DNA of 64,000 nucleotides from Macrostomum lignano (lineage: Eukaryota): contig NIVC01000491.1 of the NCBI GenBank assembly GCA_002269645.1, positions 124,001 through 188,000 of the forward strand, given 5' to 3'. Under the pieces are notes generated by a model, which worked only from the letters and a program-made list of their open reading frames with translations, searched no databases and was not told the DNA's origin. Shown here piece by piece: positions 35,636 to 54,094 of this stretch. Each line of letters begins with the position of its first letter. Position 1 is the stretch's first letter. The translations under genes and the position numbers were made by a program.

Positions 35636-36722
35636 GGATAGATAGATAGATAGATAGCACACAGTGGGACGTATTTACTGTCAGTAACTGATGGCAGTCT
35701 AACCCTTCGCCAGAGAGGTCAAGCTGCAGCTACAGCGGCAGTCAGCCAGCCGGCTTCTTGTCACTAAATAGCGCATGTCTTTGAAAAGTAAATTTCTTGG
35801 GCAAACACAAGTCTATTCAGTTGGCTAAAACTATTGAACCACTTCAGCTCAGGTAAGGTAAACGCAGCTTATTTGAAAATGCCAAATGATTTAAAAAACA
35901 GACTGACATCGCCAACAGGCAAGCAAATATGCATCTAGCAAAAAAGTAGTGAATTTCCTCGATACTCTACTTTTAACCGTAGTCTAAGTAGAGTGTAATG
36001 CGCATGAGTAATAAACTTTTCAGCAGTTTTTTATCATTGCTACCCTAAATTGAGATCTGCATTGGCTCTGTCAAACTTGCAACAGGCAGACTGTGTAACT
36101 TCATTATAATCGTTGTATAGAGACACTCGAAACTGCAGAACACACCTGGGCGTGTAGTTTGTGAATCACTCCATCATCAGACTCTATTATTATTATCGCA
36201 AAACGGTCTCAAGCAAGGCCCCCTCTTACGCGTTCTGCTCATCTCTTCAATGCAAATTGATGACACAGAATTTCTTAGAAAATTGTTCAACCGTCAAAAT
36301 GACGCTACCACCGGGCGCCACGCTTCTCGGTCAATTTTTTTATTGTATAAGTTTTTCATAAGCTGTCCATCTCAGCAATATGCGCTGCTTTTCATCGCAG
36401 AAATTTTCTTCGCATTTCACGGCGCTGGGCGTATTTACCTTGAGACCCAATCTGTCATCAGAGACTGGAACTGAGAGTGCAATTCTCTTCTGCGTTTGAA
36501 ACAATTCTTTGGAGGGAATATAGCAATTAACTAAGCAAATATGTTGCTACACTGACACTTGAGCCGAATCAAATTCATTCCTGGGTGCCGACCTCTGCTG
36601 TCGCTAATCAAGCTACACTTCTTACTAGTAAACTCTCGATTAATTACTTCGTGATTCTTCATAAGGCAATGCGGATACTGAAACTTGCGACCGTTTTCGC
36701 CTCTGGTGCTGGCGCCTCTGGC

Positions 36723-36778
<56 letters not shown>

Positions 36779-39700
36779 GGTCCGTACACCCTGTTCTCTC
36801 TTTTTTCATAAAGATTTGAGTCCAGCGAACAAACAGCCCATTGAAGTAATTTTGATCTCTAATTTTGGCAGGAACTTAAGTGGGGACTTCAGACTGCGAC
36901 AAAAATAACACAGTTTCTTCAGGAACCAGCAAACTAAATATTCATCAACTAATGCTAAAATATTCCACAGAAAAACATAGAAAAATAAAGTAACTCATCA
37001 ATGTAATTGTGAGCGGCAATAGAATTACTTCTAGAGTAATACGTGCTCGTTGAGATTTTTGGCCCCAGAGCGAGCGACAGAGAGACTTAGTAGATGAGTT
37101 TGACGCCCAGGTGAGCTGGAAACATCACAGAGCAGAAGACGCGCAGTATTGTAAAACTTGAGGGGCGCATGCACGAGATGCCACAAATGCAGCGAGTCCT
37201 GTGAGTGAACCGCTCGCCAAAAAATGTCTTTCATAGCCCCCCGACTGCGCGAGATTGCAATCTGTTCAAAAGCTGCTGCAGCAGAGAATCGCGCACAGAA
37301 TGCTATAGCCAGTCGGGCAGACAGCCTTCGGACACTCCAACCCCAGCTTGAGCCGCAGGCGCAGACGGCAGGCCATTGCACATTGCACACACACACACTG
37401 GGGCTGGTTAACTGCCAATAAGTTTTCTGGCTTTCTCCTCTTCTCTCTTTCAGGTCTGACCCTCAACAGCCCCCGCCCTTAGTCCCCAAAGGTCTCATTC
37501 TATTTCTCTAGCGAAACTAGCACCTACTCACGCATTGGCTGTCCCAGCTGTCTCGCAGGCAAAACGCAAACCGAAACCCCCTATTACAGACAGGATCAGT
37601 GGAGCAACTTCTGAGAAAGATAAACTCTCAACTAGAAGCAGACACAGCGGCTTTAGTTGAGTCAACTCAAGCGGCCACGAAAGGAGTCACTACTAGCGCT
37701 GCCTGCGATAAAAAAGTCATGATGCGATCCAGACGAACTTCTGCTGGCGGCGACAACCACAGGAATGGATATGTAAGTGAAGTCTGCGCTATCGTTCTCA
37801 GATTGGTTTAACTGCTTCCTTAGTTCTCGAAATACCTGGATTATAAATTCGGAATTCTAATAGTAATATGATTACAGTAATGTGCAGATGTGCAACCGAC
37901 AGCTCAGCCGCAGCTATTTAAGCGGCGCATCTGAAGGCTGCGTACGGCTGTTCAGTCCAAGGACTGGGGGGGGGGGTCGCCATACACAGCCTCAATTATC
38001 CCAGCTAATGCTGGCACCCATTTTACAGCTGGGTGAACTGAAGAAATGTAGAGTTAAGCGTCTTGCTCAAGGAAACAACTTCTTAGGTCGAGAATCTTCT
38101 GAAATTTCAATAGATTGGTGCTTTTTTATGCGTTTCTAGTCAAGAAAAAACATGCTTGTAGTAGACTTCTTTTTCTGGAATTGAATTGAAAAAAATACAT
38201 ACATATTAAAACAAACAAATCCGTCAAAATCCATCTCGACACAGTCCGGCACACCTGACTTTGAGAACGGCGTCATTGTCAAGCAGCGCAAAGAGCTGCA
38301 GCTGCTGGTCTCGGAGCTGCGAGAACGCGACACCGAGCTCAACGAGTTGGTCAACTCGCACCAGAAGCAGCTCAGCAACTGGGAGGCGGACAGAAAGCGG
38401 CTCATTGTACTGGAAGAGAAGCTCCGACAGAAGGACCAAGAGTTGCAGGAGAAGAACGGGCAGGTGAGCATCAATTAACGCGGCTCTCAACCATAAAAAA
38501 GAGTTTTATTGAACTCTAAAAACATTCCTACATTGCAGCTGAAGTCTGCCATGTCCCGCCTGGAAGAGTCAGTCAAGCAGTCCGAAGAGCGAGCCCTGCA
38601 GGTGCAGGAGCTGCAGAAGCAGCAGGACCGCCTGCAGGACGAGAGCGCCGGCCTGCGCGGCACCTGCGAAGAGCTGGAGGACACAAACTACCAGCTGGAC
38701 CGGAGGCTGCGCGAGACCAGCGCTCAACTCGTCCAGGTGGAGACCCGAGCTGGTCAACTTGAGCAGGATGTGCACACGGCTGCTCAGAACCTGCACCAGC
38801 TGCTCCACCGACTCAAAGCCAGCGACACGTCTCGGAAAGAGCTCCAATCCCAGCAGGAAGAGCAGCGTCAGGAGAACGAGCAGCTGCGGGCTGAGATTCG
38901 AAAGCTGGCCGGCGAGAGCCGCGACCTGCTTCGCGTCAACGAGAAACTCCAGCAGCAGAGCGAGCAGCTGCAGAAAGACTGCCAGCTCGCCGCTGAAAGG
39001 GAACGACGCAAGGACGAGCTGGTGCAGAGCCAGCGACTCAAGCAAGAGCGGACAGACGCCGAGTTGCAGCAGCTGCGCGGGATGTACGAACGAATGCAGA
39101 TGGACTTGGCCGCGCTGACTACCAATCTGGACACGAATCGGGACGGTGCAGCCGGCGGCGGGACTGACGGAGGCGCGCTGCTGGAGGCCGACCTGGCCAG
39201 GTGGACCGGCGGCAGCTCCCGCGGCGGCGCGAACGGCAGCGCGCCTGCAGCAGTCAACGGCAGGCAGCAGCGACCTCCGCCGGCGTCGCTGCCGCTGTCC
39301 AGCAAGCCGCCACTGCGACGCGGCCCGCCGTCGACTGCGGCGTCCGTGGCCTCGTCGACGTTTTCACAGCCTCCCGCATCGTCGCAGCATTATCAGCAGC
39401 ATCATCATTATCAGCAACAACAGCAGCAGCAGCAGCAGCCGCCGCCGCCGCCCTATCACGTGGGCAGCGGCCGATTTCTAGGAAACAGCAGCGGCGGCGG
39501 CAGCGGCGGCGGCGGCGGCAGCGGCGGCAGATCCGGCGGCTCCCTGCCCGACTTGAGCCCCGGCGCCAACGAGGACTCCGACAGGTGGGCCGCCGCCTCC
39601 AAACGACTCGGCGGACGCGAATCCTCATCTGGGAGGCTGGTAAGTCAGGCTAGGATTCTCGAGTTTGGTTTCTTATTGAACTCACGTGTCTTTAGTATTG

Positions 39701-39849
39701 GGTCACGATTTACCTGATCGCTTGCTTCATTCGCACTGCAGCACAGCGGCCACTATGGCAACGGAAACCTACCGTACTATTCGTCCTCGCTGGACAAATC
39801 AGTGCTCTACTCAAAAGATCTGCGCGACTACGCGTCAGATTTGGCATGA
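33797..39849 (+). CDS. CCDC62: Coiled-coil domain-containing protein 62 orthologue; the two upstream exons are tentative
   Basis: Core exons 38245-38463, 38539-39639 and 39742-39849 (TGA). They encode VIVKQRKELQLLVSELRERDTELNELVNSHQKQLSNWEADRKR and AERERRKDELVQSQRLKQERTDAELQQLRGMY, which match from recall the human CCDC62 motifs KQRKELQLLIGELKDRDKELN and EREKRKDELL..KSKQERT. Tentative phase-0 upstream exons: 33797-34105 and ~37590-37772. Confidence 0.8.
34560..34860. repeat. TC-rich low-complexity tract (with a GA-rich tract at ~34290-34445)
   Basis: Direct observation. Confidence 0.85.
35568..35657. repeat. (GATA)n microsatellite
   Basis: Direct observation. Confidence 0.95.
36724..36778. 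repeat. (TCTG)n microsatellite
   Basis: Direct observation. Confidence 0.9.
37900..38095 (+). mobile_element. Possible SINE remnant with a conserved central-domain motif
   Basis: CTGGCACCCATTTTACAGCTGGGTGAACTG...TTAAGCGTCTTGCTCAAGGAAACAAC resembles, from memory, the Nin/Deu-type SINE core; boundaries unclear. Confidence 0.4.
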
Positions 39850-40419
39850 GAAGCGCACTGCCCTGCCCACTGCCGAATCTTCACTTCAAATCCAATTGGA
39901 TCAGAATATTTATACAAAACAGCGACAGTTTTGGCGTCAGTTTGAACCATCTGAGGACCCAATTGCATTGACCAAGCGGCTGCGTGTCTGTGATGATTCA
40001 GCGATCTATTTTATACATATTATAACAAAATCTAGCAGTTTTTATATTCCTGTTTATATTCTCTTCAATAGCAAACGCTTGTGATTTTGTGTTAAGCATC
40101 TGTGCTTTTCTGTTTAAATGCGCTTCACTATACACTGGCCTACATGTACGTGTGACCTTTATTTGCTCGCACCTAATCTGCATGATGTTATTTACACTGT
40201 ATGCTCTCCACCCCAAGAGCGGGGCTTAGCGAAGTTTAATAAACGTTGACATCAAGTTAGAAACCGGATCGAATGCAATGTGAAGTACACTTGGATGGAG
40301 TCACCGCATCCTTGGGAGGGATAAAAGTTGATCATGAACAATGACTAGGGTTTACTTGATCGTATTTTGTCGGTCTGAGAACTACCGTCTGAGTTTTTAC
40401 CAGTATCAGTCTAACTCGA

Positions 40420-40952
40420 TATAATTCGATCGATAATTCTAGTCTTTCTTCGCATTCACCTCAAAAAGATCGATAATTTTGGTCTTTCTCCGCATCCACC
40501 CCAAAAAGATCGATAATTTTGGTCTTTCTTCGCATTCACCTCAAAAAGATCGATAATTTTGGTTTTTCTCCGCATCCACCCCAAAAAGATCGATAATTTT
40601 GGTCTTTCTTCGCATCCACCCCAAAAAGATCGATAATTTTGGTCTTTCTTCGCATTCACCTCAAAAAGATCGATAATTTTGGTTTTTCTCCGCATCCACC
40701 CCAAAAAGATTGATAAATTTGATTTTTCTCCGCATCCACCCCAAAACGATCGATAATTTTGGTCTTTCTCGGTCTTTCTCCGCATCACCCCAAAAAGATC
40801 GATAATTTTGGTCTTTCTCGGTCTTTCTCCGCATCCACCCCAAAAGGATCGATAATTTAGATTTTTCTCCGCATCCACCCCAAAACGATCGATAATTCAG
40901 GTCTTTCTTCGCATTCACCTCAAAAAGATCGATAATTTTGGTCTTTATCCGC
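40420..40952. repeat. 40-bp satellite (GATCGATAATTTTGGTCTTTCTCCGCATCCACCCCAAAAA), left half
   Basis: Period 40 (e.g. 40468, 40508); same family as 54095-54640. Confidence 0.93.
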
Positions 40953-43022
40953 AGCCGACATCAGCGCACCACAGAGGGCATCGGTTTAGCAGCAGCGGCA
41001 GCGGCAACGGCGGCAGCGGCAGCGGCAACGGCGGCAGCGGCAGCGGCAACGGCGGCAGCGGCAGCTCATGCAAAAGCTGTGGCGGTTCCCACGAGCGTCA
41101 TTCATGCAAGTTCAGGGACGCCAAGTGCCATGCATGCGGCAAGGTCGGCCACATCCGCAAGGTCTGCCAGTCTACCAAGTAGGCCAAGCTGCACATGCTG
41201 CAAGAGGTGCGGATGGCGCCTACTGTCGAAGGCGCGTGTGACACCCAGGCGCCGATCTTCGCAGTCCAACCATCAGGCAGCAACGCCGGCCCGTCAGTTC
41301 TGCTGCTCGTCAACGGCCAGGAATGTCAATTTGCCATCGACACCGGCTACAACTGCTTCCTCAGCTACAACTGGCTCCATCGGCTGCATTTCTGCAAACC
41401 TTCACCAATGAACGCTTTCATCCGCGAGGCCAAGCCTCAGTTTGCGTCCAGCACAACGCCCAGCAGCTACAGCTAGCGCTGCTTGTAGTCGACAAAGGAG
41501 ACACGGCGCTGCTGGGACGAGACTGGCTGGCTCACCTTCGGCTGGACTGGCCGACAATTATGGCCCAGGTGCACGCCGTGTCGGCCGATAACGACATCAG
41601 CGACCTGCATGAGAGATTCGCTGCGGTGTTCAATGACCGACTTGGCGAATATCGACACGGTAAAGTGCGGCTCAATGTCGTCGACGGTGCCCAACCTCGG
41701 TTCTTTAAAGCCCGCCTGGTTCCGTATGCCCTACGAGAGCGCGTGGACGACGAGCTGCAGAGACTGGAGGCCAACGGCATCATTTCGGCGGTTAAGCACA
41801 GCGACTGGGCCTCTCCGATCGTTCCGGTGGTCAAGAAGGATGGCGGCGTCAGGATTTGCAGTGATTATACGCAAACTTTCAACACGGCGTGCCTGACCGA
41901 GCAGTATCCTCTGCCCAAGATCGAGGACCTGTTTGCCAAGCTGGGAGGCGGCTGCAAGTGGACAAAGCTCGATCTGTCCAATGCCTTCCTGCAGCTTCCG
42001 CTCGCCGAAGACAGCAAAGCCTTCGTCACGATCAACACGCCGAAGGGACTCTACCAGTTCAATCGCATGCCTTTTGGCATCAAGTGCGCCACTGCGATCT
42101 TCCAACGGACGCTGGACACTCTGCTAGGAGATCTCGACTCAGTCCTGGTGTTTGTCGATGACATCCTGGTCACCGGCAAGACGATGCACCAACATAAGAA
42201 AACCTGGAAGAAGTTCTGCAGCGCCTCCTTGAGTCGGGACTCAGGCCGACCTGACCGACTTCGCCAGGCGCCAGAGCGAGCTGTCCATTGACCAGGGCTG
42301 CGTGCTGTGAGGCGCTCGAGTTTTGATGCCACAACAAGTGTTGAACGAGCTGCACCAAGCCCACCCTGGCATCAGCCGCATGCGCGCCCTCGCGAGAAGC
42401 TACGTCTGGTGGCCAAGTATCGACAAAGACCTGGAGGCCGCAGTAAAAGCCTGTCGCACCTGCCAGCTCAATCAGGCGGATCCATCCAAGGCCCCGGTGC
42501 AGCCATGGCCATTCCCGACTGAGCCATGGGAGCGGTTGCACATCGACTTCGCGGGACCCGTGGACGGCCGCACTTACCTGGTCCTGGTCGACGCGCACAG
42601 CAAGTGGCCAGAGGTGCACAGGATGAGCAGCACCACTGCAACTGCGACGATCAGCTGCCTGCGAGAAATCTTCGCTCGTCTCGGCCTACCGAGAAGCTTG
42701 GTGTCGGACAACGGGCCACAATTCGCTTCAGCCGAGTTTGCTGAATTCGTCAGTTCCAACCGCATCCGGCACATCTTCTCGGCGCCATTTCACCCGGCGA
42801 CCAACGGCCAGGCTGAGCGCTTCGTGTCCAGGTACTGAAGCGGCATCTGAGCAAGTGTGGTCCCTCCGATAAGCAGCTGCAACGACTGCTGATGGCCTAC
42901 CGCAATACTCCGCACAGCGTCAGTGGCACCGCGCCGAGTCATCTGCTCATCGGCCGCCGGCTGCGCAGCCGGCTGGATCTCCTGACACCATCGTTGACTT
43001 CGGCCATGCAACAGCGACAGCA
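40953..43022 (+). mobile_element. Degenerate Ty3/Gypsy (Mag-like) LTR retrotransposon, 5'-truncated: gag zinc knuckles, protease, RT, integrase; RT C-terminus/RNase H largely deleted
   Basis: [13 protein letters not shown] and [14 protein letters not shown]; AIDTG; SPIVPVVKKDGGVRICSDY, LDLSNAFLQ, FVDDIL; integrase HQAHPG...WWPSIDKDL...CRTCQ, HIDFAGP, SDNGPQF, HPATNGQAER. Contains stops and frameshifts. Confidence 0.93.
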
Positions 43023-43034
43023 TGGCCAGCCCCC

Positions 43035-43122
43035 CAGCACAGCACAGCCCCCACACCTCCTCGCGGTGTGCTGCGGACGGTGGACAAATGTCGACAGGCA
43101 GATGTGCACTGACTAAAGGGGC
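43035..43122 (+). ncRNA. HDV-like self-cleaving ribozyme fold at the LINE 5' end
   Basis: P1 CAGCAC/GTGCTG; P2 GCCCC/GGGGC; P3 ACC/GGT closing L3 TCCTCGC; P1.1 GG at 43075-43076; P4 CGGTG/CACTG; J4/2 ACTAAA. Confidence 0.75.
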
Positions 43123-43197
43123 ACACCTAGTACCTACAAGAGCTACTGTGACGACAGGTTGAAGTTGGCGGGAGATGTGGAGAAGAATCCTGGACCA
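43123..43197 (+). other. 2A (StopGo) ribosome-skipping peptide
   Basis: TPSTYKSYCDDRLKLAGDVEKNPG|P matches the D(V/I)ExNPGP consensus with an LKLAG context. Confidence 0.9.
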
Positions 43198-46100
43198 AGG
43201 TCGAATGAGGTGGAAAAACCCTGTGCAGTCTGCGCTAAGAGGACAAATGGAAGAGGACCAGTCTGCGGCGGGTGCGAAAACCATATGCACCTGGGCTGCA
43301 GCAGGATGAAACGAGGTGAACTCTACGACCTGGAGAAGGTGGAAAGGCGGCGTGAATGGATGGGACCGTGCTGCAAGCGCGACGAGGAAGAAAGGAGGCT
43401 TGGGAAGCATCACGGAAAAGAAAGGAGTGAGCTAGAAAAGTTGGAGCGATGTATAGTGTGCGGAAAGGCCATCAGGAGGGACCAATCGAGTCTAAAATGT
43501 GAAGACTGCGGAGCCGTGGGGCACCGGCAATGTACGGGGCTCAGTAGATGGGCCAAAGAGCAAGGAGCCAGATGGAGACGCCAGGAATGCCGTGAGGAGA
43601 GGCAGGAGGACAAAGCGCTGGGGAAGAAAGCGCCGATGGAGAAGCAGGAGACGGGGCAGGACCCGATGAAGAAGGGACGGTGCGCGGTCTGCGGTAGATT
43701 CAGAAGGACGGGACACGGCACCAGCTGCAGACGCTGTGGCAAAGAAGTGCACTGGACTTGCGCTGGTCTGGGCAGCCGTACGGCTAAGGAAAGAATGAAG
43801 CAGCTTGGAGGCTTTACTCGTATGTGCACGGAGTGTGAGAAGGAAAAACAAGTGAAACCCGAAAAAACGGCGGAGATGAAGCAGGACACGGAGGTGAGCG
43901 ACGAAGGCATCAGCATCCTGCAATGAAACTGTGACAACTTGATGGCTAAGATCCCGGAGCTGAAAGTCTTCTTGGACAAGCACGATGTAGACGTTGCCAT
44001 GCTCCAGGAGACCAAGTTGAGAGCTGAGGACGGAACCATCAATGTGGCTGGCTTTGAAGAGGTCAGGCAGGACAGAACCCGGCAGCAAGCTATCCGGAAC
44101 TCCGGGGGGGAGGACTGGTCACGCTCATCCGGCAGGGGATCCCCTACAGAATCTTAGGGGAGTACTGCAGCTATGGTGAGGATGGTGCGGAGATCCTAGC
44201 GGTCCAACTCACGAGGAATGGAGGTTCCATCAAGCTGGCGAATGTGTACATCTCCCCGGACAGAGGAGGAGGAGCGCAGGACATGGACAGGATCCCGAGC
44301 GGACAAAATTGGATAGTTGGAGGTGACTTTAATGCGCACCACGAGCTGTGGGACAATGAAATGGAAGCGGAGGTCGGGGAGAGCGTCTGGTAAACTGGAT
44401 GGACGACAACGATATGGTGGTTCTAAATACGGGCGATCCTACAAGGGACGCCAGAGGTGATAGTAGGGATTCGGCGCCAGATGTCACGTTTTGCTACCAC
44501 ACGCAAGAGGCGCGCTGGGGCTGGCAGACGGTCAAAGAGCTGGGATCGGATCATAGACCGATCATCATGAGTAGCGGCAGAAGCGGTAGACCGGAGGTGA
44601 GCAGAAAGATTATCACATGGAATTGGAGAAAGGCGGACTGGGAAGCCTATCGTGAGATGCTTTCGAAGCTGGCTCTGGAATACAACCCGGATGAGGGCTC
44701 TCCATCTGATGCTGAGAAACGGCTCAGGGAGGGCCTGTTAACGGCGGCCAGAAAGTGTATTGGATTGATCGCCAGGCAGACTCGCAACAGAGAAATGGTG
44801 GAACCGGAGACTAGAGTGGAGATGGAAGCTAGAGATGAGAAGAGAAAATTGGCGGACGAAAATGGTGATGGAGAGGCTGAATGGGCGGCGGCAAATGAAA
44901 AGCTGAGAGAGTATCAGGAGGAGCAAAGCCGAGGAGTGGAAAGCCCACGTCGAGGATAACGGAACTAGCGAAAGGATGTGGTCGGTGCTGCGTAAGTTGG
45001 ATGGGAAAGGAGTGGTCCGTGGCAGGGACAGGCTGCTCATCCACAACGGCAGAACGCGCGCCTCTGACTGTAAGCAAGGCTAACGCGTTCGCTAAGGAGT
45101 ACAGCAAAGTTAGCGACGTCAAAATCCCGGCAGAGAAGAGTAAAGTTGCCAATGAGGCGAACAAAATGCTTAGAGAGGAGGGCCCAAACAGTGAGGATGG
45201 GCAGGATATAACTATGCAAGAGCTCAAAGACTCTAAACAAGATGGACGGAAACAGAGCGGCAGGAATGGACAGAGTCCACCCCAGGCTGCTGAAGGCCAT
45301 CCCGGAGGCCCTGCTAAGCAAAGTGCTGGGCTTCTTCAACCGGCTACTAACCACTGGCGAAAGTCCGCAAAACTGGCGTATTATCCCGCTCCTCAAAGAC
45401 GGCAAGGACCCGGAGGAAGTGGGGTCTTCCGGTCAGCCTGACCGCGTGTATGTGCAAATGGATGGAAAGAATCCTGGCTAACAGAATCAGATACGTGCTG
45501 GAAACCAACAATCAGTTAAATGACGCGCAGGCAGGATTCAGGGAGAGCAGGAGCACAGAGGATCAGCTGCTGAGGCTCTCGCAGGCGGTGGACGATGGCT
45601 TCCAGAGAAGACAGTGTACGATGATCTTGGCGTTGTATGATTTCCTGAGGGCGTTCGACAAGGTATGGAGGGCGGGAGTGCTGTACAAACTCCTTAGAGC
45701 TGGAGTGAGCAGGAACATTGCCAGATGGATTAGAGGTTGGCTTACCAACAGATTAGCGAAGGTGCGGGTCGGCGACGAGGACAGTAAGGGCCGAAAGTTT
45801 ATCGAAAGCCTGCCGCAGGGGTCCGTGCTCTCGCCGATCCTGTTCATCCTGTTCCTGTTGGATGCGCTAGACGGTTTCGAAGGACTGCAAGCTAGCGGAT
45901 TCGCGGACGATCAGGCTACCTGGGTGAGCCACGAATCCAGAAAGGACGAGTGTAAAATACAGCAAGAAGCAGCAAACACAATCCACAGTTGGAGCAAGGA
46001 GTGGCTCATGCCCCTGGCAGCTCCCAAATGCTCCCTGACGCTGTTCAGCTCCGATGCGGCAGCTAGACCGACAGAGGAGGATCGTGTCTACATTGGCGAC

Positions 46101-47624
46101 CAAGCTATGAACTGGGTCATGACGCCCAAGTTCCTGGGGCTGACTTTTGATCCCAAGCTGACATTCAGGGCACATGTCCAGCAGGTCACGCAGAGTGCCA
46201 GGAAGAATATCAAATTGATGCGCAGAGTCGCAGACAAAGATTGGGGCTGGGAGTTGCAGCTTCTGCGTCTGACCTATGTGGCGGTCATCATGAGCGGAAT
46301 TCTATACGCGGCCACGGCCTGGACCCCTTGGATCGCAAAGGAGGGATGGCACCGGCTGGAAGTGGTTCAAAACTGCGCGGCCAGGATAACGACCGGACTC
46401 ATGAGTTCTACGCCTGTGGATGCTCTGAGAGCGGAAAGCGGATTGACATCGCTGGCGAGGAGGTGCAAGGCGCTGTGGACGGTTAAGCTGGAGCGGATGC
46501 TCAGATGCAAACCGGACTCACATCGAGGTAAACTGGCCCGAGTGGCGCCCAGACAGAGGCTTAGGAGACTTGGCTGGAGGAAGAAGGCAGGAGCGGGCAT
46601 GGCGGAGTGCAAGCTTCAGAATATGACCTTTGAGGACGAGGTGCCACCGCCACCATGGAAACCGCGTGGGAGGGATGCTGTTAAGATCGATGAAGTGAGG
46701 GAAATGCTGCCGGAGGACAATTAGAGGAAAGGACTTTACAGCATCATGGAACAGGGACCGATGGACCGGATACTCTACACGGACGGATCGGTGGTGGATG
46801 ACAAAGGAGGCAGTGGAGTGGTGGTGTGCCAACCCACGGATAATGACCCGAAGGGGGTCGGTAAAGTTGAGGCGACCATCCACCAAGCTGCGGGTACGCC
46901 CTGCTCATCTACGCAAGCGGAGCTCTATGCGGTCATCGCTGGCCTGAACTGGCTTGATGAATACGCCGGCAAATGAGGACGCGTCATGATCATCAGTGAC
47001 AGCCAGAGCTGCCTGCAAGCTATTAAAGGTCTGAGCAAAAACCCGTTGGCTATCAGAGCAAGGAAAATGCTGAGGAAGCTCGAGGAGGAACAGATTGATA
47101 TGGGTGCCCGCGCACTGCGGTCTTGCTGGAATTGAACTGGCGGATGAGGCGGCGAAAGTGGCGTCGACTAGGGCCCAGGATGGCATCACAGTGCCTGCCA
47201 GCAGCAGCAAAAATTACATTCAGAGTAAACTAGGCAGAGACGACGACAGATCGCACAGGAGGAGCAAGGAGACGTACGGCGAGCAGGGAGTGGCGCTCCA
47301 ACCGACGGGCCTTCGTAAGGATCGGAAGCGGTAGATTTCAGACGCTTCAGGAGTGGCCACTCCATGGATCTGGCGGCATACAGCAAACGGGTGGGCAAGC
47401 AAGAAGAAGGGTGGTGCACTAGGTGCGGCATGGCGCATGAGACGATTGAGCACGTTATGGACTGTCCCGTCACGCGCAGCCTGAGGGAGAAGCTGGATCT
47501 GCACGGGCTGAGAGATCTGAGCAGAAGGCCGGGGAACGCGGCTGAGTTCTGGAAGAGGTTCCGAGAGGAAGTACGTCACTAGCGGCTCGGTATCTAGGCA
47601 CACACACACACACACACACAATCA

Positions 47625-50600
47625 CGCACCGGGCACTTGTTGGTACGGTATACAATGGTGGGCACTTATTTTGCAATTTTTTTTGACACACGAAAACACA
47701 CACATACACACAGTGCAATGACCTATTAAGTATTTTTAGCATTTAAATGATGAAAAAAAGCATACATTGAAATAAAAAAGCACGTCCCATACTAATAGTA
47801 TGATCTATTGAAAGTGAAGTAATAGCGTAACATCGTGTAACTATATTGTCCTCAGTCCAGCGAATTCAGCATTACTTGAAATACAAAAGGCTTCGTTAAA
47901 GCCAATCCACATGAAGGAAAAACTAGTTACAAGCAGTCTATTGACCTTTACCTTTACTAATACGCTATAATGCTGTACGCAATATGCCTGACTAATATGA
48001 ATAAAAAATTCAATTACACTTGCGCTTAGGAAAAAACCTAAAATTGACAGTGAAACTGAAAAACTGAAACGCAGAGATTAGTTAAACAGATTAAACAACA
48101 ATTCCGGTCGAGTGAGAAAACAGGAGTCTCGTTATTTAGAGAACTCTGGCATCCAGCATTACTCTCGTAGACTATTAGCTGCTCTCCTGAGTTCGAAGCT
48201 GACAGGTCCGTTGCAGTCGGCATCGATTGAGTCGACTGCCAATTTAGTCAATGGGTTTCGTTTCTTCTTTTCACTGGAACCTGTGGTGGGATTAGCAAAA
48301 GATCGATTTCGCATATCTATTTAGTGATTTCAAGGCCGACAAAATCATTCTTCTCTGCATGTCGGCTCCAGAAGATGCTAGTTTGCTTGCAGCTTTCTGT
48401 AGGAGCATTCTACTTTAGTAAAGTGTACCCATTCTAAAATAAGCTGTTTTTAATATGTCCCAACAAGTCTCTGTGCAGTGTGTCATCCGTTTGCCCAACA
48501 ATTTGTTCTGGAGCCCTTTATTAATTGAGTTCTTTAGGTGACTTAACAAATGCGGAAAAAACTAGACACACACACACAGTGGCCCAACACTTCGTGTCCC
48601 AATAATTGCTAGGAAAAATGCACTGCAGTGTTTAAGCATCTCCTCTGAGGGGCCCTTGCATGCATAGCTATAGAATCTGCTAAGACCCGATCTGAGAGTT
48701 AAAAGTACAAAAAGTTATAACGCTTCTAGACACGAAAACGAATGCAGCCACAGCATGAACTAACCTTTCATTGAAGCTTCTGCTTAAGACTTTGATGCTG
48801 TGAAGCATTCTGGCATCTAGCATTACTCTCGTAGACTATTAGCTGCTCTCCTGAGTTCGAAGCTGACAGGTCCGTTGCAGTCGGCATCGATTGAGTCGAC
48901 TGCCAATTTAGTCAATGGGTTTCGTTTCTTCTTTTCACTGGAACCTGTGGTGGGATTAGCAAAAGATCGATTTCGCATATCTATTTAGTGATTTCAAGGA
49001 CGACAAAATCATTCTTCTCTGCATGTCGGCTCCAGAAGATGCTAGTTTGCTTGCAGCTTTCTGTAGGAGCATTCTACTTTAGTAAAGTGTACCCATTCTG
49101 AAATAAGCTGTTTTTAATATGTCCCAACAAGTCTCTGTGCAGTGTGTCATCCGTTTGCCCAACAATTTGTTCTGGAGCCCTTTATTAATTGAGTTCTTTA
49201 GGTGACTTAACAAATGCGGAAAAAACTAGACACACACACACAGTGGCCCAACACTTCGTGTCCCAATAATTGCTAGGAAAAATGCACTGCAGTGTTTAAG
49301 CATCTCCTCTGAGGGGCCCTTGCATGCATAGCTATAGAATCTGCTAAGACCCGATCTGAGAGTTAAAAGTACAAAAAGTTATAACGCTTCTAGACACGAA
49401 AACGAATGCAGCCACAGCATGAACTAACCTTTCATTGAAGCTTCTGCTTAAGACTTTGATGCTGTGAAGCATTCTGGCATCTAGCATTACTCTCGTAGAC
49501 TATTAGCTGCTCTCCTGAGTTCGAAGCTGACAGGTCCGTTGCAGTCGGCATCGATTGAGTCGACTGCCAATTTAGTCAATGGGTTTCGTTTCTTCTTTTC
49601 ACTGGAACCTGTGGTGGGATTAGCAAAAGATCGATTTCGCATATCTATTTAGTGATTTCAAGGCCGACAAAATCATTCTTCTCTGCATGTCGGCTCCAGA
49701 AGATGCTAGTTTGCTTGCAGCTTTCTGTAGGAGCATTCTACTTTAGTAAAGTGTACCCATTCTAAAATAAGCTGTTTTTAATATGTCCCAACAAGTCTCT
49801 GTGCAGTGTGTCATCCGTTTGCCCAACAATTTGTTCTGGAGCCCTTTATTAATTGAGTTCTTTAGGTGACTTAACAAATGCGGAAAAAACTAGACACACA
49901 CACACAGTGGCCCAACACTTCGTGTCCCAATAATTGCTAGGAAAAATGCACTGCAGTGTTTAAGCATCTCCTCTGAGGGGCCCTTGCATGCATAGCTATA
50001 GAATCTGCTAAGACCCGATCTGAGAGTTAAAAGTACAAAAAGTTATAACGCTTCTAGACACGAAAAAGAATGCATCCACAGCATGAACTAACCTTTCATT
50101 GAAGCTTCTGCTTAAGACTTTGATGCTGTGAAGCATTCTGGCATCTAGCATTACTCTCGTAGACTATTAGCTGCTCTCCTGAGTTCGAAGCTGACAGGTC
50201 CGTTGCAGTCGGCATCGATTGAGTCGACTGCCAATTTAGTCAATGGGTTTCGTTTCTTCTTTTCACTGGAACCTGTGGTGGGATTAGCAAAAGATCGATT
50301 TCGCATATCTATTTAGTGATTTCAAGGACGACAAAATCATTCTTCTCTGCATGTCGGCTCCAGAAGATGCTAGTTTGCTTGCAGCTTTCTGTAGGAGCAT
50401 TCTACTTTAGTAAAGTGTACCCATTCTAAAATAAGCTGTTTTTAATATGTCCCAACAAGTCTCTGTGCAGTGTGTCATCCGTTTGCCCAACAATTTGTTC
50501 TGGAGCCCTTTATTAATTGAGTTCTTTAGGTGACTTAACAAATGCGGAAAAAACTAGACACACACACACAGTGGCCCAACACTTCGTGTCCCAATAATTG

Positions 50601-51900
50601 CTAGGAAAAATGCACTGCAGTGTTTAAGCATCTCCTCTGAGGGGCCCTTGCATGCATAGCTATAGAATCTGCTAAGACCCAATCTGAGAGTTAAAAGTAC
50701 AAAAAGTTATAATATTTGTGGTTGGACACGTAGGCTATTGAATGTCAATGGATTCAGACGAAATGTCAAGTTTTACTGAAAGCCTTTACAGCTTACCGGT
50801 TAAAGTCGACGGATCCTTTGGCAATTGGCCACATGGCAGTTGATCAAAGGTGATATACCTGAAGTAAAGGTAGGTACTGCTTAGCAGGAGCAGTATTTTT
50901 TATAGCATTTAAATATAAATGCTTCTTATTTCCGACAAAGTTTTTTAATACCACTTACATGTTTCTCGCTGTGCCATTCCATGCTGTTCCTTTCCATACC
51001 ATGGTGACTCGGGTGCCATGGCAGAGGCAGAGTTGACCATTGATTTCAGCATAGCGAGTACATGCCAATTTAGTTTTACCGTACGTTTGCGGGGTGGCGT
51101 CAATAATAGACCAAAATAAATGTACACTTAACTAGCAAGGGGACTCTGGTAAATTGGAGCCATGTACACAGGGGGTAGGGCTTGGTCCTAACATGTACGG
51201 GGTAAGTCCTAATAGGAGTGGGCTATTGTAAACGACACTCTAGCACACAGTCCCAACAATTTATAGAATATCGAATGCGCGCAGCAGTCAATAGCATGAG
51301 TCCTAACAAGAGTGGGCTGTCGTATTCAACACTGCAACACTGTCCTAACAATTTAGTTCGTGTAGAGTACTGATGCCCATCACAGTCAAAAGTACATGTA
51401 AGCCCTTGTCATTTCTTTAGGTTTATCTCCATCCAGAACCATCCTTTGACAATAAAATACCCTTAAAAGTATTTTGCTATGTTTTGCTATGTATGTATTT
51501 AATGTATGCTATGTATATAAGTCTTGAAACAAAGACTGCAGCAAATGAATGCGCTTGAAATCTACTATTAGTAAAAATATGAGAAAAAAACAATAAAAAT
51601 ATGCGGGAGCAGATTAGCCATTTCAGTGTCCCAATAGTGATTTGGTCGAATTTTGTATCATTTTTCATTATTGGGACGCCAGTTTTTGCTTAATTATGGA
51701 CTCAGAAAGTAAAATTATTAAAAATGAGTTGCACCATCAAAAAGAGGCTGTCGAGCTGAATCCAAAGAGTATTTTTTTGAGCTGCTATTGTAAGTTTTTT
51801 GGAAGTGTTGGACGGACTTGATGGGACAGTCCCAACATTTTTTTTGGCCCAACAGTGCGGGTCCCGTTGTACGCGTATGGCCCAACAAATGCCCCGTGCG
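47625..51900. mobile_element. Non-autonomous TIR element inserted in the LINE (CA)n tail
   Basis: CGCACCGGGCACTTGTTGG (47625-47643) versus the reverse complement of 51882-51900 (CGCACGGGGCATTTGTTGG): 17/19 identical. CA repeats on both sides; no long ORF inside. Confidence 0.6.
48145..50711. repeat. 664-bp tandem repeat, ~3.9 near-identical copies
   Basis: TCTGGCAT(C/T) starts at 48145, 48809, 49473 and 50137. Confidence 0.95.
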
Positions 51901-51935
51901 CAAACACACGCACACACGCACACACACACACACAC

Positions 51936-52022
51936 ACAGCGACAGCAGCATCAGCTTCAGCAGCAGCGGCCAGCGCGTCAGTTCCAGCCTGGAGATCGCG
52001 TGCTCTACCGCGATTTCAGCAC
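51936..52022 (+). mobile_element. Continuation of the Gypsy integrase C-terminus
   Basis: Removing the LINE restores TSAMQQRQ|QHQLQQQRPARQFQPGDRVLYRDFS. Confidence 0.8.
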
Positions 52023-53871
52023 TGTGATGGGTTTCGACCTTCGGCCCCCTTGTTGGGAAAGCCTTCGGGCCTCAGGTCTCAGAAATAAATCAATTAGAGA
52101 CCTGGCCCCCCACTCCTGTCAGATGGTCAGCCCCATGGTAGCTTGATCGTGTGGCGAGCAGTCTAGGTCCTATAGCTAAGAGAGGGACAGCGAGAGACAA
52201 GCAGGGAGAATTTTGAAGGTAGAGATCAGCTAATCCGCAGATTAACTAACCCGCTGCCACCAGCCCGTGCGTCCTGGCTCACCAAACTTTCGAAATCGGG
52301 CTTCCGACTAGAGGGGGCTTAGCACTTACCTGCCAACTAGTGTCTTTTTGCTGTCAATCTCGAAGTCATAGCCGATGATAAGGGACACTGCTGGGACTCA
52401 ATCGCATTGGCCATGCAGGTACAGAGGGGACTTTGTGCAAGGGATTCTTGCAGTGGCGAGACTATGGGGTAGCTACATGTACTATTACATTGCTAAATAC
52501 GTGGAATTGTACTTTTGGCTTTCAACGCGCCAACTAGCCTCTCGTAGCGCTGATGATAGACTAACTCGAACCTCAGAGACCGCATGATTCATTACCCGAG
52601 CCGCTTGGCGAACCTAGAGTGCACAAAGTACATCTCTGGCGCCGATTTTGCTCACTGATTTGATAGATTGATTGATTGATTGCCATTGGTCCACTGTGAC
52701 CGGCGCCTACTAGCTTAGCTACTCATCTGAGCCATCGGCGAACAAAGAAATAAAAGCGATAAAATAACTGTCAGATTTAACCTTCTCCTTAAATAACTTC
52801 ACACCTCAGATTGAATTGGAGTTTCAGACTACTAACAGTATTATTGAATGATTTCTGCCTCAGTAACAGCACTGCTGAACAAAATGAGCAAAAGTGTGCT
52901 CCTAATCCAGCTACTGAAATAGGGGACAGATAAGGGATCACCCAATCAAGCAAGTCTACGTAGCCTCTCACCCAACCAATCAGAAACTCAACAGCCGGAG
53001 ACCAGGTAATCCACAGTGACCGAATCGGCTTAGTGCTTCGCAGCTGTAGGCCCGGGATGATGCTGATGTCACAATCTTCGCAGATAGCTAGCAGGTGATG
53101 ATCTTAACCTTGATTTTCGCTGCTGACGACCAGGGGAATTCGTCCTTGATGATTGTGGGGGGAGTCGCGATCCGGGGATCAAGAGACGACGGTCGCGAGC
53201 AGCAGCCGGGTGTCAGGTGACAGGTGACCGGCCAAGGGGTTTGAAGTCCGAGCGGGCCAAAAACTCCGGTTTAAATAGCCGCCAACTGGATCGCAATTTG
53301 TTAAAATGGAACACCTCGACGCTGATTGGCTGAGCTGATTTGTTATAACGCACGTCGAATTTTCTGATTGACTGAGCTTGTTGCCACCCAAACTCACGTG
53401 ACCAGAAGATCCTATCAGCTCCCTCGGGGCCATAAAAATACGACAGGTGCCGTCATAAATCACTCAAAATCGCTACATAAAGATTTATGCCTTTCGCGTA
53501 GGAATGACAAAAATTAATGAAAAAATATACATTAGAAAGCTCTTATTAAGTAGAAAGTGAAGATAATGAAGAGAAATCGCCAATCGCTAATCCCAAAGTA
53601 CTTTTAGGGGTAAAACGCATAGCTGTCAAAGCTGTCACGCGCTTGAGTGAGCACGAACAATAGGCCCTGACCTCATAAATCTTGATGGCCTGTCAAAATG
53701 ATGAGAAAAAAGCTACCGCCCGCATCCTCTCAGACCATCTGGCGCCAGCCTCAGCACTGAGTGAGGTGCAGGTGGCTGTCAGACCAGCTCAGACGCAATG
53801 ATTTATGACCCAAAAGTAGCAAGAAACCGCGCCTATGTTATTATAACTACAAGTATGGCAGATTAATATAG

Positions 53872-54094
53872 CTACAGGCGCTACCCGAATCGAGTTCGAG
53901 CACCACCTGACAGATTGATGCTGCAGTGAGGGCGTTAACTAAGGGGGGAGATGTGATATAGTGACACGATGGACTTTCAAATAGTTTGTGTGTACTCGTA
54001 CTGAGTGTTGACTCACTAGCAGTGGCTCTCAAGCGAGCACCTTTTCTCACTCCTACAATTCCACACTATTGCCTCGGTTAATATAGTTATCACA
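53872..54094 (+). mobile_element. Gypsy pol end, polypurine tract and 143-bp 3' LTR
   Basis: YRRYPNRVRAPPDRLMLQ*; PPT AAGGGGGGAGA at 53941-53951; LTR 53952-54094 bounded by TGTGATA...TATCACA; the 40-bp satellite resumes immediately afterwards. Confidence 0.8.

What the first reader, a model, noticed from the sequence alone, without database searches (positions are those of the whole stretch)
43035..43122. HDV-like ribozyme fold at the 5' end of a full-length metazoan Ingi-type LINE
Seen in sequence: within ~12 nt of the left TSD the sequence forms a nested double pseudoknot. P1 CAGCAC (43035-40 or 43040-45) pairs with GTGCTG (43068-73); P2 GCCCC (43047-51) with GGGGC (43118-22); P3 ACC/GGT closes an L3 loop TCCTCGC identical to HDV L3; GG (43075-76) can form P1.1 with the L3 CC; P4 CGGTG/CACTG encloses a GACA-AA-TGTC hairpin; J4/2 ACTAAA carries a candidate catalytic C (43113). 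Established: HDV-like ribozymes process the 5' ends of R2, RTE and L1Tc/Ingi retrotransposons. Inference: this element self-cleaves to define its 5' end. Caveats: P1 position 1 is mismatched and a 3-nt gap separates P2 from P3, so this copy may be decayed.
Basis: partly seen in the sequence, partly recalled or inferred. Interest (0 to 1): 0.85.

Follow-up and report, generated by a model that had tools for sequence, protein, structure and literature searches.

The report
Probable HDV-like ribozyme in flatworm LINE
The first ~90 bases of a decayed LINE retrotransposon in a Macrostomum (flatworm) genome fold like the self-cutting RNA of hepatitis delta virus, a known way for such elements to trim their own RNA, so this is a likely new example of a known trick, not a new mechanism.

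Summary
A descriptor loosened to fit this fold finds it only there in the window and in 2 of 300 shuffled windows. It sits 12-17 nt inside a TSD-bounded insertion in a Macrostomum LTR-retrotransposon integrase gene. It lies in sense, directly upstream of an AUG-less 2A peptide, PHD fingers, AP endonuclease, RT and RNase H. That is the layout of trypanosome L1Tc/ingi. The core is canonical: 3-bp P3, L3 UCCUCGC, 2-bp P1.1, and a J4/2 C that aligns with the model consensus C.

Four things weaken it:
- The cleavage-site pair is A·C or C·C.
- Three unpaired bases separate P2 from P3.
- Rfam scores (19.7, 18.5 and 13.9 bits) are far below gathering.
- An equally stable competing hairpin exists.

ORF2 is broken by at least 5 frameshifts. 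No second copy of the family could be retrieved, so covariation is untested. The insert starts 11-16 nt upstream of the predicted cut, which may be junction filler.

Verdict: probably a genuine HDV-like ribozyme or its relic (about 0.7). Activity of this copy is doubtful. "Ingi-type" is untested. It is a new member of a known kind, of moderate interest.

The parts
43011..43022 (+). Left target-site duplication, (ACA)GCGACAGCA. 9 bp are unambiguous and up to 12 bp are possible. It is the last stretch of LTR-element integrase sequence before the insert.
   Evidence: blastn and alignment to the uninterrupted M. lignano copy L020: homology ends at 43022 and resumes at 51939, with L020 11851-11859 present on both sides.
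43023..43034 (+). 12-nt junction filler, UGGCCAGCCCCC, between the TSD and the first possible P1. It is 16 nt long if P1 uses the 43039/40 register. It may be templated from target DNA 21-34 nt downstream.
   Evidence: 12 of 15 matches to L020 (93 of 5000 shuffles reach this) and 11 of 15 to the window's right flank (306 of 5000). The evidence is weak.
43034..43122 (+). Candidate HDV-like ribozyme.
- P1: 43040-45 (or 43035-40) with 43068-73
- J1/2: A43046 (or 43041-46)
- P2: 43047-51 with 43118-22
- spacer: CAC 43052-54
- P3: 43055-57 with 43065-67
- L3: 43058-64
- P1.1: 43059-60 with 43075-76
- P4: 43078-43111
- J4/2: 43112-17, with candidate catalytic C43113
- predicted cut: 5' of 43039/40 or of 43034/35
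   Evidence: Pair list. Descriptor scan and shuffles. Rfam sub-threshold hits RF02682 at 19.7 bits, RF00094 at 18.5 and RF01787 at 13.9. It is the only HDV-family hit in 36000-54000.
43114..43116 (+). UAA inside J4/2, in frame with the downstream ORF. It closes this frame to translation coming from upstream.
   Evidence: Translation.
43117..43926 (+). ORF1-like reading frame with no AUG before the 2A. It holds a 19-codon leader, the 2A motif DVEKNPGP (43174-43197) and then PHD/C1-type zinc fingers. Stop is TGA at 43924-26.
   Evidence: Pfam PHD at 7.1e-09. It is the only NPGP motif in six frames of the window.
43939..47582 (+). ORF2 remnants: AP endonuclease (43939-44560), RT (45242-46724), an RNase H fragment (46746-47334) and a C-terminal Cys/His motif. 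It is broken by at least 5 frameshifts and at least 1 in-frame stop.
   Evidence: ORF list and frames. Pfam RVT_1 at 7.5e-26, Exo_endo_phos_2 at 4e-4, RNase_H at 2.3e-3, the last below its cut-off.
47598..47618 (+). First (CA)n, 16 nt after the ORF2 stop. It is the likely original 3' tail of the LINE.
47619..51903 (+). 4.3 kb of AT-rich non-coding DNA inside the same TSD-bounded insert. It includes about 3.9 tandem copies of a 664-bp unit (48145-50712, 99.5% identical). It is a nested (CA)n-tailed passenger, a 3' transduction or a long 3' UTR.
   Evidence: Self-blast and ORF repeats.
51904..51938 (+). Second, terminal (CA)n, abutting the right TSD.
   Evidence: TRF and sequence.
51936..51947 (+). 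Right target-site duplication. The integrase reading frame resumes here (…RQQHQLQQQRPARQFQPGDRVLY…).
   Evidence: and protein P0021.
38509..43022 (+). Upstream part of the host LTR retrotransposon, with pol/integrase in the same orientation as the LINE. It could supply the co-transcript. The rest continues at 51939 to about 54094.
   Evidence: Pfam rve and Integrase_H2C2. 91% amino-acid identity to M. lignano BOX15_Mlig033860g5. blastn.

Best explanation
Window 43034-43122 is the 5'-terminal HDV-like self-cleaving ribozyme, or its mutated relic, of a (CA)n-tailed LINE of a Macrostomum flatworm. The LINE has the order 2A, PHD, APE, RT, RNase H.

Proposed mechanism, inferred from the family:
1. 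The element has no demonstrated promoter of its own and is transcribed as part of a longer RNA. Here that could be the LTR retrotransposon it sits in, in sense orientation.
2. The nested double pseudoknot forms as the RNA is made.
3. The C in J4/2 (C43113), with Mg2+, catalyses cleavage at the 5' base of P1. This leaves a 5'-OH RNA that begins with the ribozyme.
4. That uncapped RNA is both the template for target-primed reverse transcription and the mRNA.
5. Translation starts without an AUG just after the in-frame UAA of J4/2. The 2A 'StopGo' site 19 codons later discards the leader, so the element's protein starts at a defined proline.

Shown here: the fold, its position and strand, the 2A and domain order, the TSDs and the host organism.

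Inferred: cleavage, co-transcription and ribozyme-assisted initiation.

This particular copy is old. Its ribozyme has two peripheral defects that may reduce or abolish activity.
For: 1. All helices and core residues are in the canonical order. The 3-bp P3 and 7-nt L3 carry the U and G expected for the reverse wobble and the CC for P1.1. P1' follows P3' with no linker. GG for P1.1 follows one base later. CUAA in J4/2 aligns with the RF00094 consensus.
2. The P1-start to P3 distance is 16 nt. This is in the range (15-18 nt) seen in 13 of the 16 loci returned by the metagenome scan for the same P3/L3 core.
3. A descriptor loosened to fit this fold hits only this locus. Shuffles give 0.0067 hits per window and 0.001 per 9.7 kb of local sequence. 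The same descriptor recovers 10 of those 16 loci. Ten chance occurrences of the 19-nt core in bacterial genomes all lack the P1.1 GG.
4. RF02682 gives E = 0.2 over 401 nt against all 4227 families. Counting about five HDV-type models (my estimate of how many Rfam holds) would give about 2e-4. It is the only HDV-family hit in 18 kb.
5. The position fits: sense strand, 12-17 nt from the verified TSD, abutting the ORF.
6. The architecture is that of L1Tc: ribozyme in the first 77 nt, then 2A at the N-terminus, then APE, RT and RNase H (PMC3185411, PMC3708506, PMC6765202).
7. Literature tolerances cover most of the irregularities. R2 ribozymes have 6-7 bp P1. One third have mismatches in the first five P2 pairs. 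Their 5' junctions often carry non-templated or target-derived filler (PMC3774820). One L1TcRz construct cleaves without P2 (PMC3185411).
8. Another LINE 5' candidate, L014, scores similarly low at 22 bits.
Against: - No Rfam model reaches gathering: 19.7 vs 44, 18.5 vs 50 and 13.9 vs 37. In an all-family search of 18 kb the hit has E = 8.8, which is noise level. Three metagenome loci with a perfect 7-bp P1 score 40-45 bits.
- The cleavage-site pair is A·C or C·C, not the usual G·U.
- Three unpaired nucleotides separate P2 from P3, which normally stack directly.
- J1/2 is 1 nt in the better register. A 1-nt spacer gave little cleavage in drz-Agam-2-1 (PMC4908430).
- A non-pseudoknotted alternative competes. 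A 6-bp CACACC/GGUGUG hairpin stacked on P2 has -33.1 kcal/mol. The double pseudoknot sums to about the same and excludes that hairpin.
- The folding z-score is only -1.66.
- The insert starts 11-16 nt upstream of either predicted cut.
- There is a single copy, so no covariation.
- ORF2 is heavily decayed, so the ribozyme may be too.
Confidence: 0.7

Rival explanations
1. Real HDV-derived fold, but it does not (or no longer does) cut. It would serve as a structured 5' UTR for cap-independent, AUG-less translation initiation or for binding the element's protein. Alternatively it is simply a dead relic in this family.
For: - HDV-like ribozymes of R2 and L1Tc are proposed to act like IRESes (PMC6765202).
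- There is no AUG between the in-frame UAA and the 2A.
- The cleavage-site pair is non-canonical, a 3-nt P2/P3 spacer is present, and the competing fold is isoenergetic.
- The 5' end of the insert lies upstream of the predicted cut.
Against: - The residues needed for catalysis are intact, and there would be no reason to keep them for a purely structural role: the J4/2 C, the L3 U and G, and P1.1.
- In the known cases, initiation activity accompanies cleavage and does not replace it.
Confidence: 0.15
2. Chance look-alike. A GC-rich 5' UTR hairpin (CACACC-loop-GGUGUG) with low-complexity CAGCA and C-run repeats happens to satisfy a loosened HDV descriptor.
For: - The CM scores are at noise level in an unrestricted search.
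- The descriptor was loosened after seeing the candidate.
- The 13-nt P3/L3 core alone, with up to 2 mismatches, is expected 0.72 times per window. The exact 19-mer occurs by chance in bacterial genomes.
- The repeats CAGCA x3 and AGCCCCC x2 make alternative pairings easy.
- The MFE z-score is not significant.
Against: - Even the loosened descriptor is met in only 2 of 300 shuffled windows. That is about 1e-5 for a given 200-nt, single-strand target such as a LINE 5' end.
- The chance bacterial cores lack P1.1.
- Position, strand and the L1Tc-like ribozyme-plus-2A layout were not part of the descriptor.
Confidence: 0.08
3. [quoted passage not shown] In that case 43023-43038 is genuine element sequence.
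For: - The insert begins at 43023, 11-16 nt before either predicted cut.
- M. lignano has SL trans-splicing (PMC8629364, abstract seen).
- L1Tc combines promoter and ribozyme in the same 77 nt (PMC3185411).
Against: - Filler and target duplications at 5' junctions are common in ribozyme-processed non-LTR elements and are not inherited (PMC3774820).
- The filler weakly resembles nearby target DNA.
- No promoter evidence was sought or found.
Confidence: 0.07

Closest known systems
L1TcRz / Pr77-hallmark ribozymes of trypanosomatid L1Tc/ingi-clade LINEs (PMC3185411, PMC4035085)
   Same: - An HDV-like fold occupies the first ~80-90 nt of a non-site-specific LINE.
- A 2A peptide at the N-terminus follows it, then APE, RT and RNase H.
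- The TSD is about 9-12 bp.
- The proposed role is release from co-transcripts plus help with translation.
   Different: - The host is a metazoan (flatworm).
- PHD fingers lie between the 2A and APE, and there is an apparent ORF1/ORF2 split.
- The tail is (CA)n instead of poly(A).
- P1.1 has 2 bp here, against 1-2 bp in L1TcRz.
- Sequence homology to Pr77 was not tested, and promoter activity is unknown.
- Clade membership by RT phylogeny was not tested.
R2, R4, Dong, Baggins and RTE ribozymes of metazoan non-LTR retrotransposons (PMC3774820, PMC6765202; Ruminski et al. 2011, cited there)
   Same: - The ribozyme sits at the 5' terminus, in sense.
- The elements lack their own promoter and rely on co-transcription. 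Baggins and RTE are often found downstream of LTR elements or in introns.
- 5' junctions are variable and carry filler.
- The ORF lacks a clear AUG.
- P1 is 6-7 bp and P2 is imperfect.
   Different: - Those elements have no 2A.
- R2 is site-specific with a restriction-like endonuclease.
- Here P2 is separated from P3 by 3 nt and the cleavage-site pair is A·C or C·C.
drz-Agam-1 (RF01787) and the HDV ribozymes (RF00094, RF02682)
   Same: - The P3-L3-P3' core is the same: ACC-UCCUCG(C/U)-GGU.
- GG is present for P1.1.
- C-U-A-A is present in J4/2 (alignments).
   Different: - Scores are 13.9-19.7 bits against gathering scores of 37-50.
- J1.1/4 is shorter, at 1 nt.
- P2 is irregular.
2A-bearing metazoan APE-type LINEs (Odon et al. 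2013, PMC3708506), e.g. Ingi-1_AC and elements with PHD between 2A and APE
   Same: - The canonical GDVExNPGP motif lies in the N-terminal region.
- PHD fingers lie between the 2A and APE in some families.
   Different: - That paper does not mention ribozymes (0 occurrences).
- Here the 2A lies only 19 codons after an in-frame stop, with no AUG.
- Flatworms are not among the hosts listed there.

Membership tests
HDV-like self-cleaving ribozymes | Nested double-pseudoknot topology, in the order P1, J1/2, P2, P3, L3, P3', P1', P1.1, P4, J4/2, P2' | tested here: met
   Pair list and descriptor hit.
HDV-like self-cleaving ribozymes | P1 of 6-7 bp contiguous with P3', with the cleavage-site pair usually G·U | tested here: inconclusive
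   There are 6 Watson-Crick pairs in either register. The seventh position is A43039·C43074 or C43034·C43074. P1 mismatches are uncommon and were linked to loss of in vitro activity (PMC3774820).
HDV-like self-cleaving ribozymes | 3-bp P3 closing a 7-8 nt L3 with a conserved U and G and two C's that form P1.1 with GG after P1' | tested here: met
   ACC/GGU, L3 UCCUCGC, C43059-G43076 and C43060-G43075.
HDV-like self-cleaving ribozymes | Catalytic C in J4/2 followed by purines, immediately 5' of P2' | tested here: met
   C43113-U-A-A aligns with the RF00094 consensus. One extra A lies before P2'.
HDV-like self-cleaving ribozymes | P2 of at least 5 bp stacked directly on P3 | tested here: inconclusive
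   A 5-bp GCCCC/GGGGC helix exists, but 3 unpaired nt (CAC 43052-54) separate it from P3. The strict descriptor fails. High-scoring metagenome loci also break a strict P2 rule. R2 ribozymes often have mismatches at the base of P2 (PMC3774820).
HDV-like self-cleaving ribozymes | Reaches the Rfam gathering score of an HDV-family model | tested here: not met
   Scores are 19.7/44, 18.5/50 and 13.9/37. Calibrators: three metagenome loci with a perfect 7-bp P1 score 40-45 bits, and LINE candidate L014 scores 22.
HDV-like self-cleaving ribozymes | Compensatory base changes among homologues | not testable with these tools
   No second copy was found in the window, the protein databases or the contig collections.
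HDV-like self-cleaving ribozymes | [quoted passage not shown] | not testable with these tools
   This needs a bench experiment.
Ribozyme-terminated non-LTR retrotransposons | Ribozyme in sense at the extreme 5' end, upstream of the ORF, within a TSD-bounded insertion | tested here: met
   TSDs were verified against the empty site. The fold starts 12-17 nt after the TSD and ends 0 nt before the ORF.
Ribozyme-terminated non-LTR retrotransposons | Element 5' end coincides with the cleavage site, apart from per-insertion filler | tested here: inconclusive
   11-16 extra nt are present. Their resemblance to nearby target DNA is weak. Other copies are needed.
Ingi clade (L1Tc/ingi) of LINEs | 2A near the N-terminus, then APE, RT and RNase H | tested here: met
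   RNase H is only a fragment below the Pfam cut-off. The element also has PHD fingers and an apparent ORF1 stop.
Ingi clade (L1Tc/ingi) of LINEs | RT-domain phylogeny places it within Ingi | not testable with these tools
   No reference RT set was available, and the Odon et al. supplement is not held. The best database RT hits are unnamed and at most 41% identical.
2A 'StopGo' peptides | D(V/I)ExNPGP motif with an upstream context of about 18 aa | tested here: met
   …YKSYCDDRLKLAGDVEKNPGP. It is the only NPGP in six frames. Activity was not tested.

The most novel reading that the evidence does not exclude
A ribozyme-plus-2A 'start module' may be shared by trypanosome L1Tc/ingi and flatworm LINEs. 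In it, an HDV-like ribozyme's J4/2 UAA closes the frame, and its 3' edge launches AUG-less translation of a throw-away leader that a 2A then removes. That would imply either an ancient, vertically kept 5' cassette of this LINE lineage or repeated convergence. It would also make ribozyme-driven, start-codon-independent initiation testable in a tractable metazoan (Macrostomum).
Probability: 0.2. Interest if true: 0.55.

Novelty: new member of a known kind. Interest (0 to 1): 0.4.

Why it matters
HDV-like ribozymes at LINE 5' ends are well documented in R2, R4, Baggins, RTE and L1Tc/ingi. One more instance is not surprising.

What is mildly new:
- The host is a free-living flatworm. No held paper links HDV-like ribozymes with Macrostomum.
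- The ribozyme directly abuts an AUG-less 2A leader. This pairing is documented for L1Tc. It is not discussed for metazoan 2A-bearing LINEs (PMC3708506 does not mention ribozymes).

If the family consensus is active, three things follow:
- The L1Tc-type 5' module would extend to animals.
- It would give a genetically tractable animal in which to test ribozyme-assisted translation initiation.
- It would help annotate true 5' ends of LINEs in the repeat-rich Macrostomum genomes.

Tried and rejected
- Rfam at gathering thresholds over the whole window gave nothing.
- A strict canonical descriptor (perfect 7-bp P1, P2 abutting P3) gave no hit. It also misses bona fide-looking loci from the metagenome scan, so it is too strict.
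- A second copy in the window was not found.
- The N-terminal 2A/PHD protein has no homologue at E <= 1e-3 in 5.8 billion proteins.
- The RT has only distant relatives (at most 41% identity) on short metagenome contigs. None of these show a 2A or an HDV core.
- Exact-protein look-ups of three LINE ORFs are not on record.
- The DNA pattern 'HDV core + 2A' gave 0 hits in metagenome, genome and viral contigs.
- The core-only pattern in metagenomes gave 16 loci. Most look like microbial HDV-like or tRNA-adjacent (theta-like) ribozymes, and one is an unrelated LINE (L014). They serve as calibrators, not relatives.
- The exact 19-mer in bacterial genomes gave 10 chance coding hits without P1.1. In viral contigs it gave none.
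- A TSD between 43000-43046 and the DNA just after the first (CA)n (47571-47760) was not found. The real right TSD is at 51936-47.
- The idea that the fold belongs to the LTR element is rejected. The empty-site comparison puts it inside the insert.
- The 'DSEKNPL*' string after the L014 fold was considered as a decayed 2A. It was left as a probable coincidence.
- Supplement files for reference RT sequences are not held.

Full report
**What is at the coordinates**

- P1 is CAGCAC with GUGCUG 43068-73. It can form in two registers (43040-45 or 43035-40) because CAGCA is repeated.
- P2 is G43047-C43051 with G43118-C43122.
- P3 is ACC 43055-57 with GGU 43065-67. It closes L3, UCCUCGC.
- P1.1 is C43059/C43060 with G43076/G43075.
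- P4 is 43078-82 with 43107-11, with further inner pairs.
- J4/2 is ACUAAA.

- The seventh, cleavage-site pair of P1 is A·C (register a) or C·C (register b).
- Three unpaired bases (CAC 43052-54) separate P2 from P3.

Two small corrections.
- L3 equals 7 of the 8 L3 positions of the RF00094 consensus. It has the 7-nt length of the drz-Agam-1 model.
- The proposed inner P4 hairpin with a 2-nt loop is implausible. The MFE fold pairs the inside of P4 differently.

**Is it more than chance?**

Rfam at gathering thresholds finds nothing in the window. In E-value mode on 42900-43300, three HDV-family models land on the same spot.
- RF02682: 19.7 bits, E = 0.2.
- RF00094: 18.5 bits.
- RF01787 (drz-Agam-1): 13.9 bits.

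All are far below gathering (44, 50 and 37). Over 18 kb and all 4227 families the best hit has E = 8.8. By covariance model alone it is therefore in the noise, although it is the only HDV-family hit there.

Covariance models cannot score the pseudoknots, so I wrote a descriptor.
- The strict form needs a perfect 7-bp P1 and P2 abutting P3. It finds nothing.
- The relaxed form leaves the first P1 pair free and allows a 0-3 nt P2/P3 gap. It finds this locus and no other on either strand of the window.
- Dinucleotide shuffles meet the relaxed form 0.0067 times per 64-kb window (2 of 300). For 9.7 kb of the local GC-rich sequence the rate is 0.001.

The descriptor was loosened after seeing the candidate, so these figures are optimistic. 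Even so, for a pre-specified 200-nt, one-strand target such as a LINE 5' end, the expectation is about 1e-5.

Controls:
- The relaxed descriptor recovers 10 of the 16 loci returned by a metagenome scan for the same core.
- Three of those loci with a perfect 7-bp P1 reach 40-45 bits on RF02682. Only one reaches gathering. Another LINE-associated candidate, L014, scores 22 bits. Low Rfam scores are thus typical for eukaryotic members.
- Ten chance occurrences of the exact 19-nt core in GC-rich bacterial genomes all lack the P1.1 GG.

**What it belongs to**

Downstream in the same frame, directly after an in-frame UAA that is part of J4/2, comes a reading frame with no AUG. It reads RGTPSTYKSYCDDRLKLAGDVEKNPGP…. 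This is a canonical 2A motif and the only NPGP in six frames of the window.

The rest of the element follows in order.
- PHD/C1 zinc fingers, with a stop at 43926.
- A new ATG at 43942 opening an AP-endonuclease.
- RT (Pfam 7.5e-26).
- An RNase H fragment.
- A Cys/His motif.
- A (CA)n at 47598-618.

ORF2 is broken by at least 5 frameshifts and at least 1 in-frame stop, so the copy is old.

**Host, target and boundaries**

The DNA upstream is the integrase of an LTR retrotransposon. Its closest protein is BOX15_Mlig033860g5 of Macrostomum lignano, at 91% identity. The corresponding DNA (L020, NIVC01000944.1) is 94% identical. The window therefore comes from M. lignano or a close relative, which confirms 'metazoan'.

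Aligning the uninterrupted copy shows homology stopping at 43022 and resuming at 51939 at 97.7% identity. L020 11851-59 is present on both sides. This is a 9-12 bp TSD, (ACA)GCGACAGCA.

The TSD-bounded insert, however, is 43023-51938. After the LINE's first (CA)n come 4.3 kb of AT-rich DNA, with about 3.9 copies of a 664-bp tandem unit, and a second (CA)n abutting the right TSD. This could be a nested (CA)n-tailed passenger, a 3' transduction primed at a downstream (CA)n, or a long 3' UTR. I could not decide between them.

**The 5' junction**

Between the TSD and the predicted cleavage site lie extra nucleotides: 11-12 nt in register b and 16-17 nt in register a. If ribozyme-cleaved RNA was the template, these are not element sequence.

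The literature on R2 reports that most 5' junctions of ribozyme-processed elements carry non-templated nucleotides or duplications of upstream or downstream target DNA. These are regenerated at each insertion (PMC3774820).

The filler UGGCCAGCCCCCCAG matches target DNA 21-34 nt downstream of the TSD.
- 12 of 15 positions match in L020 (93 of 5000 shuffled fillers reach this).
- 11 of 15 match in the window's own right flank (306 of 5000).

This is suggestive only. The offset counts against the simple claim that the ribozyme defined this copy's 5' end, but it does not refute it.

**How well would it work?**

The catalytic core is intact. Several peripheral features argue for reduced activity.
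- P1 mismatches are uncommon and were linked to loss of in vitro cleavage (PMC3774820).
- In register a, J1/2 is a single nucleotide. A 1-nt spacer gave little cleavage in drz-Agam-2-1 (PMC4908430). However, the P1-start to P3 distance (16 nt) is in the range (15-18 nt) seen at 13 of the 16 metagenome loci.
- The CAC spacer lets P3 extend to a 6-bp hairpin that sequesters half of P1'. That alternative (-33.1 kcal/mol) is about isoenergetic with the sum of the pseudoknot helices.

On the other side:
- R2 ribozymes often have mismatches in the first P2 pairs (PMC3774820).
- One L1TcRz construct cleaves without P2 (PMC3185411).

One or two mutations could account for both defects. A G-to-A transition at 43039 would explain the first. 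An AC slippage in CCCCCACACC would explain the second. This fits the degree of decay of ORF2, but it is inference. The family consensus is needed.

**Mechanism proposed (inferred from the family)**

1. The LINE lies in sense inside the LTR element. Baggins and RTE elements are reported to be transcribed from introns or from upstream LTR elements (PMC6765202).
2. The co-transcript folds, and C43113 with Mg2+ cuts at the base of P1.
3. The uncapped RNA serves as TPRT template and as mRNA.
4. Initiation occurs without AUG just 3' of the ribozyme. An IRES-like role has been proposed for R2 and L1Tc ribozymes (PMC6765202).
5. The 2A releases the leader.

**Comparison and novelty**

The closest known system is L1Tc/ingi of trypanosomatids, with the ribozyme in the first 77 nt and then 2A, APE, RT and RNase H (PMC3185411, PMC4035085, PMC3708506).

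Differences here are the metazoan host, PHD fingers with an ORF1/ORF2 split, the (CA)n tail and an irregular P2.

'Ingi-type' could not be tested by RT phylogeny. The best RT hits are unnamed and at most 41% identical.

Odon et al. describe 2A in metazoan LINEs, including PHD between 2A and APE, but do not mention ribozymes. No held paper links HDV-like ribozymes with Macrostomum.

I file this as a new member of a known kind.

**Verdict**

| Reading | Confidence |
|---|---|
| Genuine HDV-like ribozyme or its relic | about 0.7 |
| Real fold, but non-cleaving or dead | about 0.15 |
| Chance look-alike | about 0.08 |
| 5' end set by another mechanism | about 0.07 |

Interest is 0.4.

Noticed in passing
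window 47619-51938: The TSD-bounded insert carries 4.3 kb of AT-rich DNA behind the LINE's first (CA)n. It includes about 3.9 tandem copies of a 664-bp unit (48145-50712, 99.5% identical) and ends in a second (CA)n. It could be a nested (CA)n-tailed non-autonomous element, a 3' transduction or a long 3' UTR.
   Followed up: partly
window 43023-43037 vs 51967-51981 and L020 11878-11892: The junction filler UGGCCAGCCCCCCAG resembles target DNA 21-34 nt downstream of the TSD (12 of 15 and 11 of 15 matches). It may be a templated insertion made during 5' end joining.
   Followed up: partly
window 43114-43173: The UAA of the ribozyme's J4/2 is in frame with the ORF, and no AUG lies between it and the 2A. 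Translation of the 2A leader would have to start at a non-AUG codon within 19 codons.
   Followed up: no
window 43924-43944: ORF1 (2A + PHD) ends with TGA. An ATG 16 nt later, in the same frame, opens the endonuclease. The element may be a genuine two-ORF LINE, not a single ORF with a nonsense mutation.
   Followed up: no
window 39408-39534: A long hairpin inside the LTR element gives sub-threshold matches to several miRNA-precursor models on both strands (up to 26 bits).
   Followed up: no
window 48779-48816, 49443-49480, 50107-50144: Each 664-bp repeat unit gives the same weak match to a CRISPR-repeat model (21 bits, gathering 39). This is presumably a small hairpin in the satellite unit.
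   Followed up: no
L014 212-293 (JAAGOD010057916.1): An unrelated LINE-like contig has RVT_1 about 1.9 kb downstream. It carries an HDV-like candidate with the same P3/L3 core and a 7-bp P2 abutting P3 (22 bits on RF02682). The string DSEKNPL* follows immediately and looks faintly like a decayed 2A.
   Followed up: partly
L006, L011, L012, L018: HDV-like folds with perfect 7-bp P1 lie between tRNA genes in tRNA arrays. They look like the phage 'theta' ribozymes (PMC10879173).
   Followed up: no
L004 836-906 and 2297-2373; L017 332-406 and 884-946: One metagenome contig has two HDV-like hits (32 and 40 bits). Another has an HDV-like hit plus a near-threshold type II hammerhead (34.7 bits, gathering 37).
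   Followed up: no
window 42826-42892: The host LTR element's integrase is itself frameshifted or stopped (stop at 42836-38, frame change before 42892). The LTR element copy is also dead.
   Followed up: no
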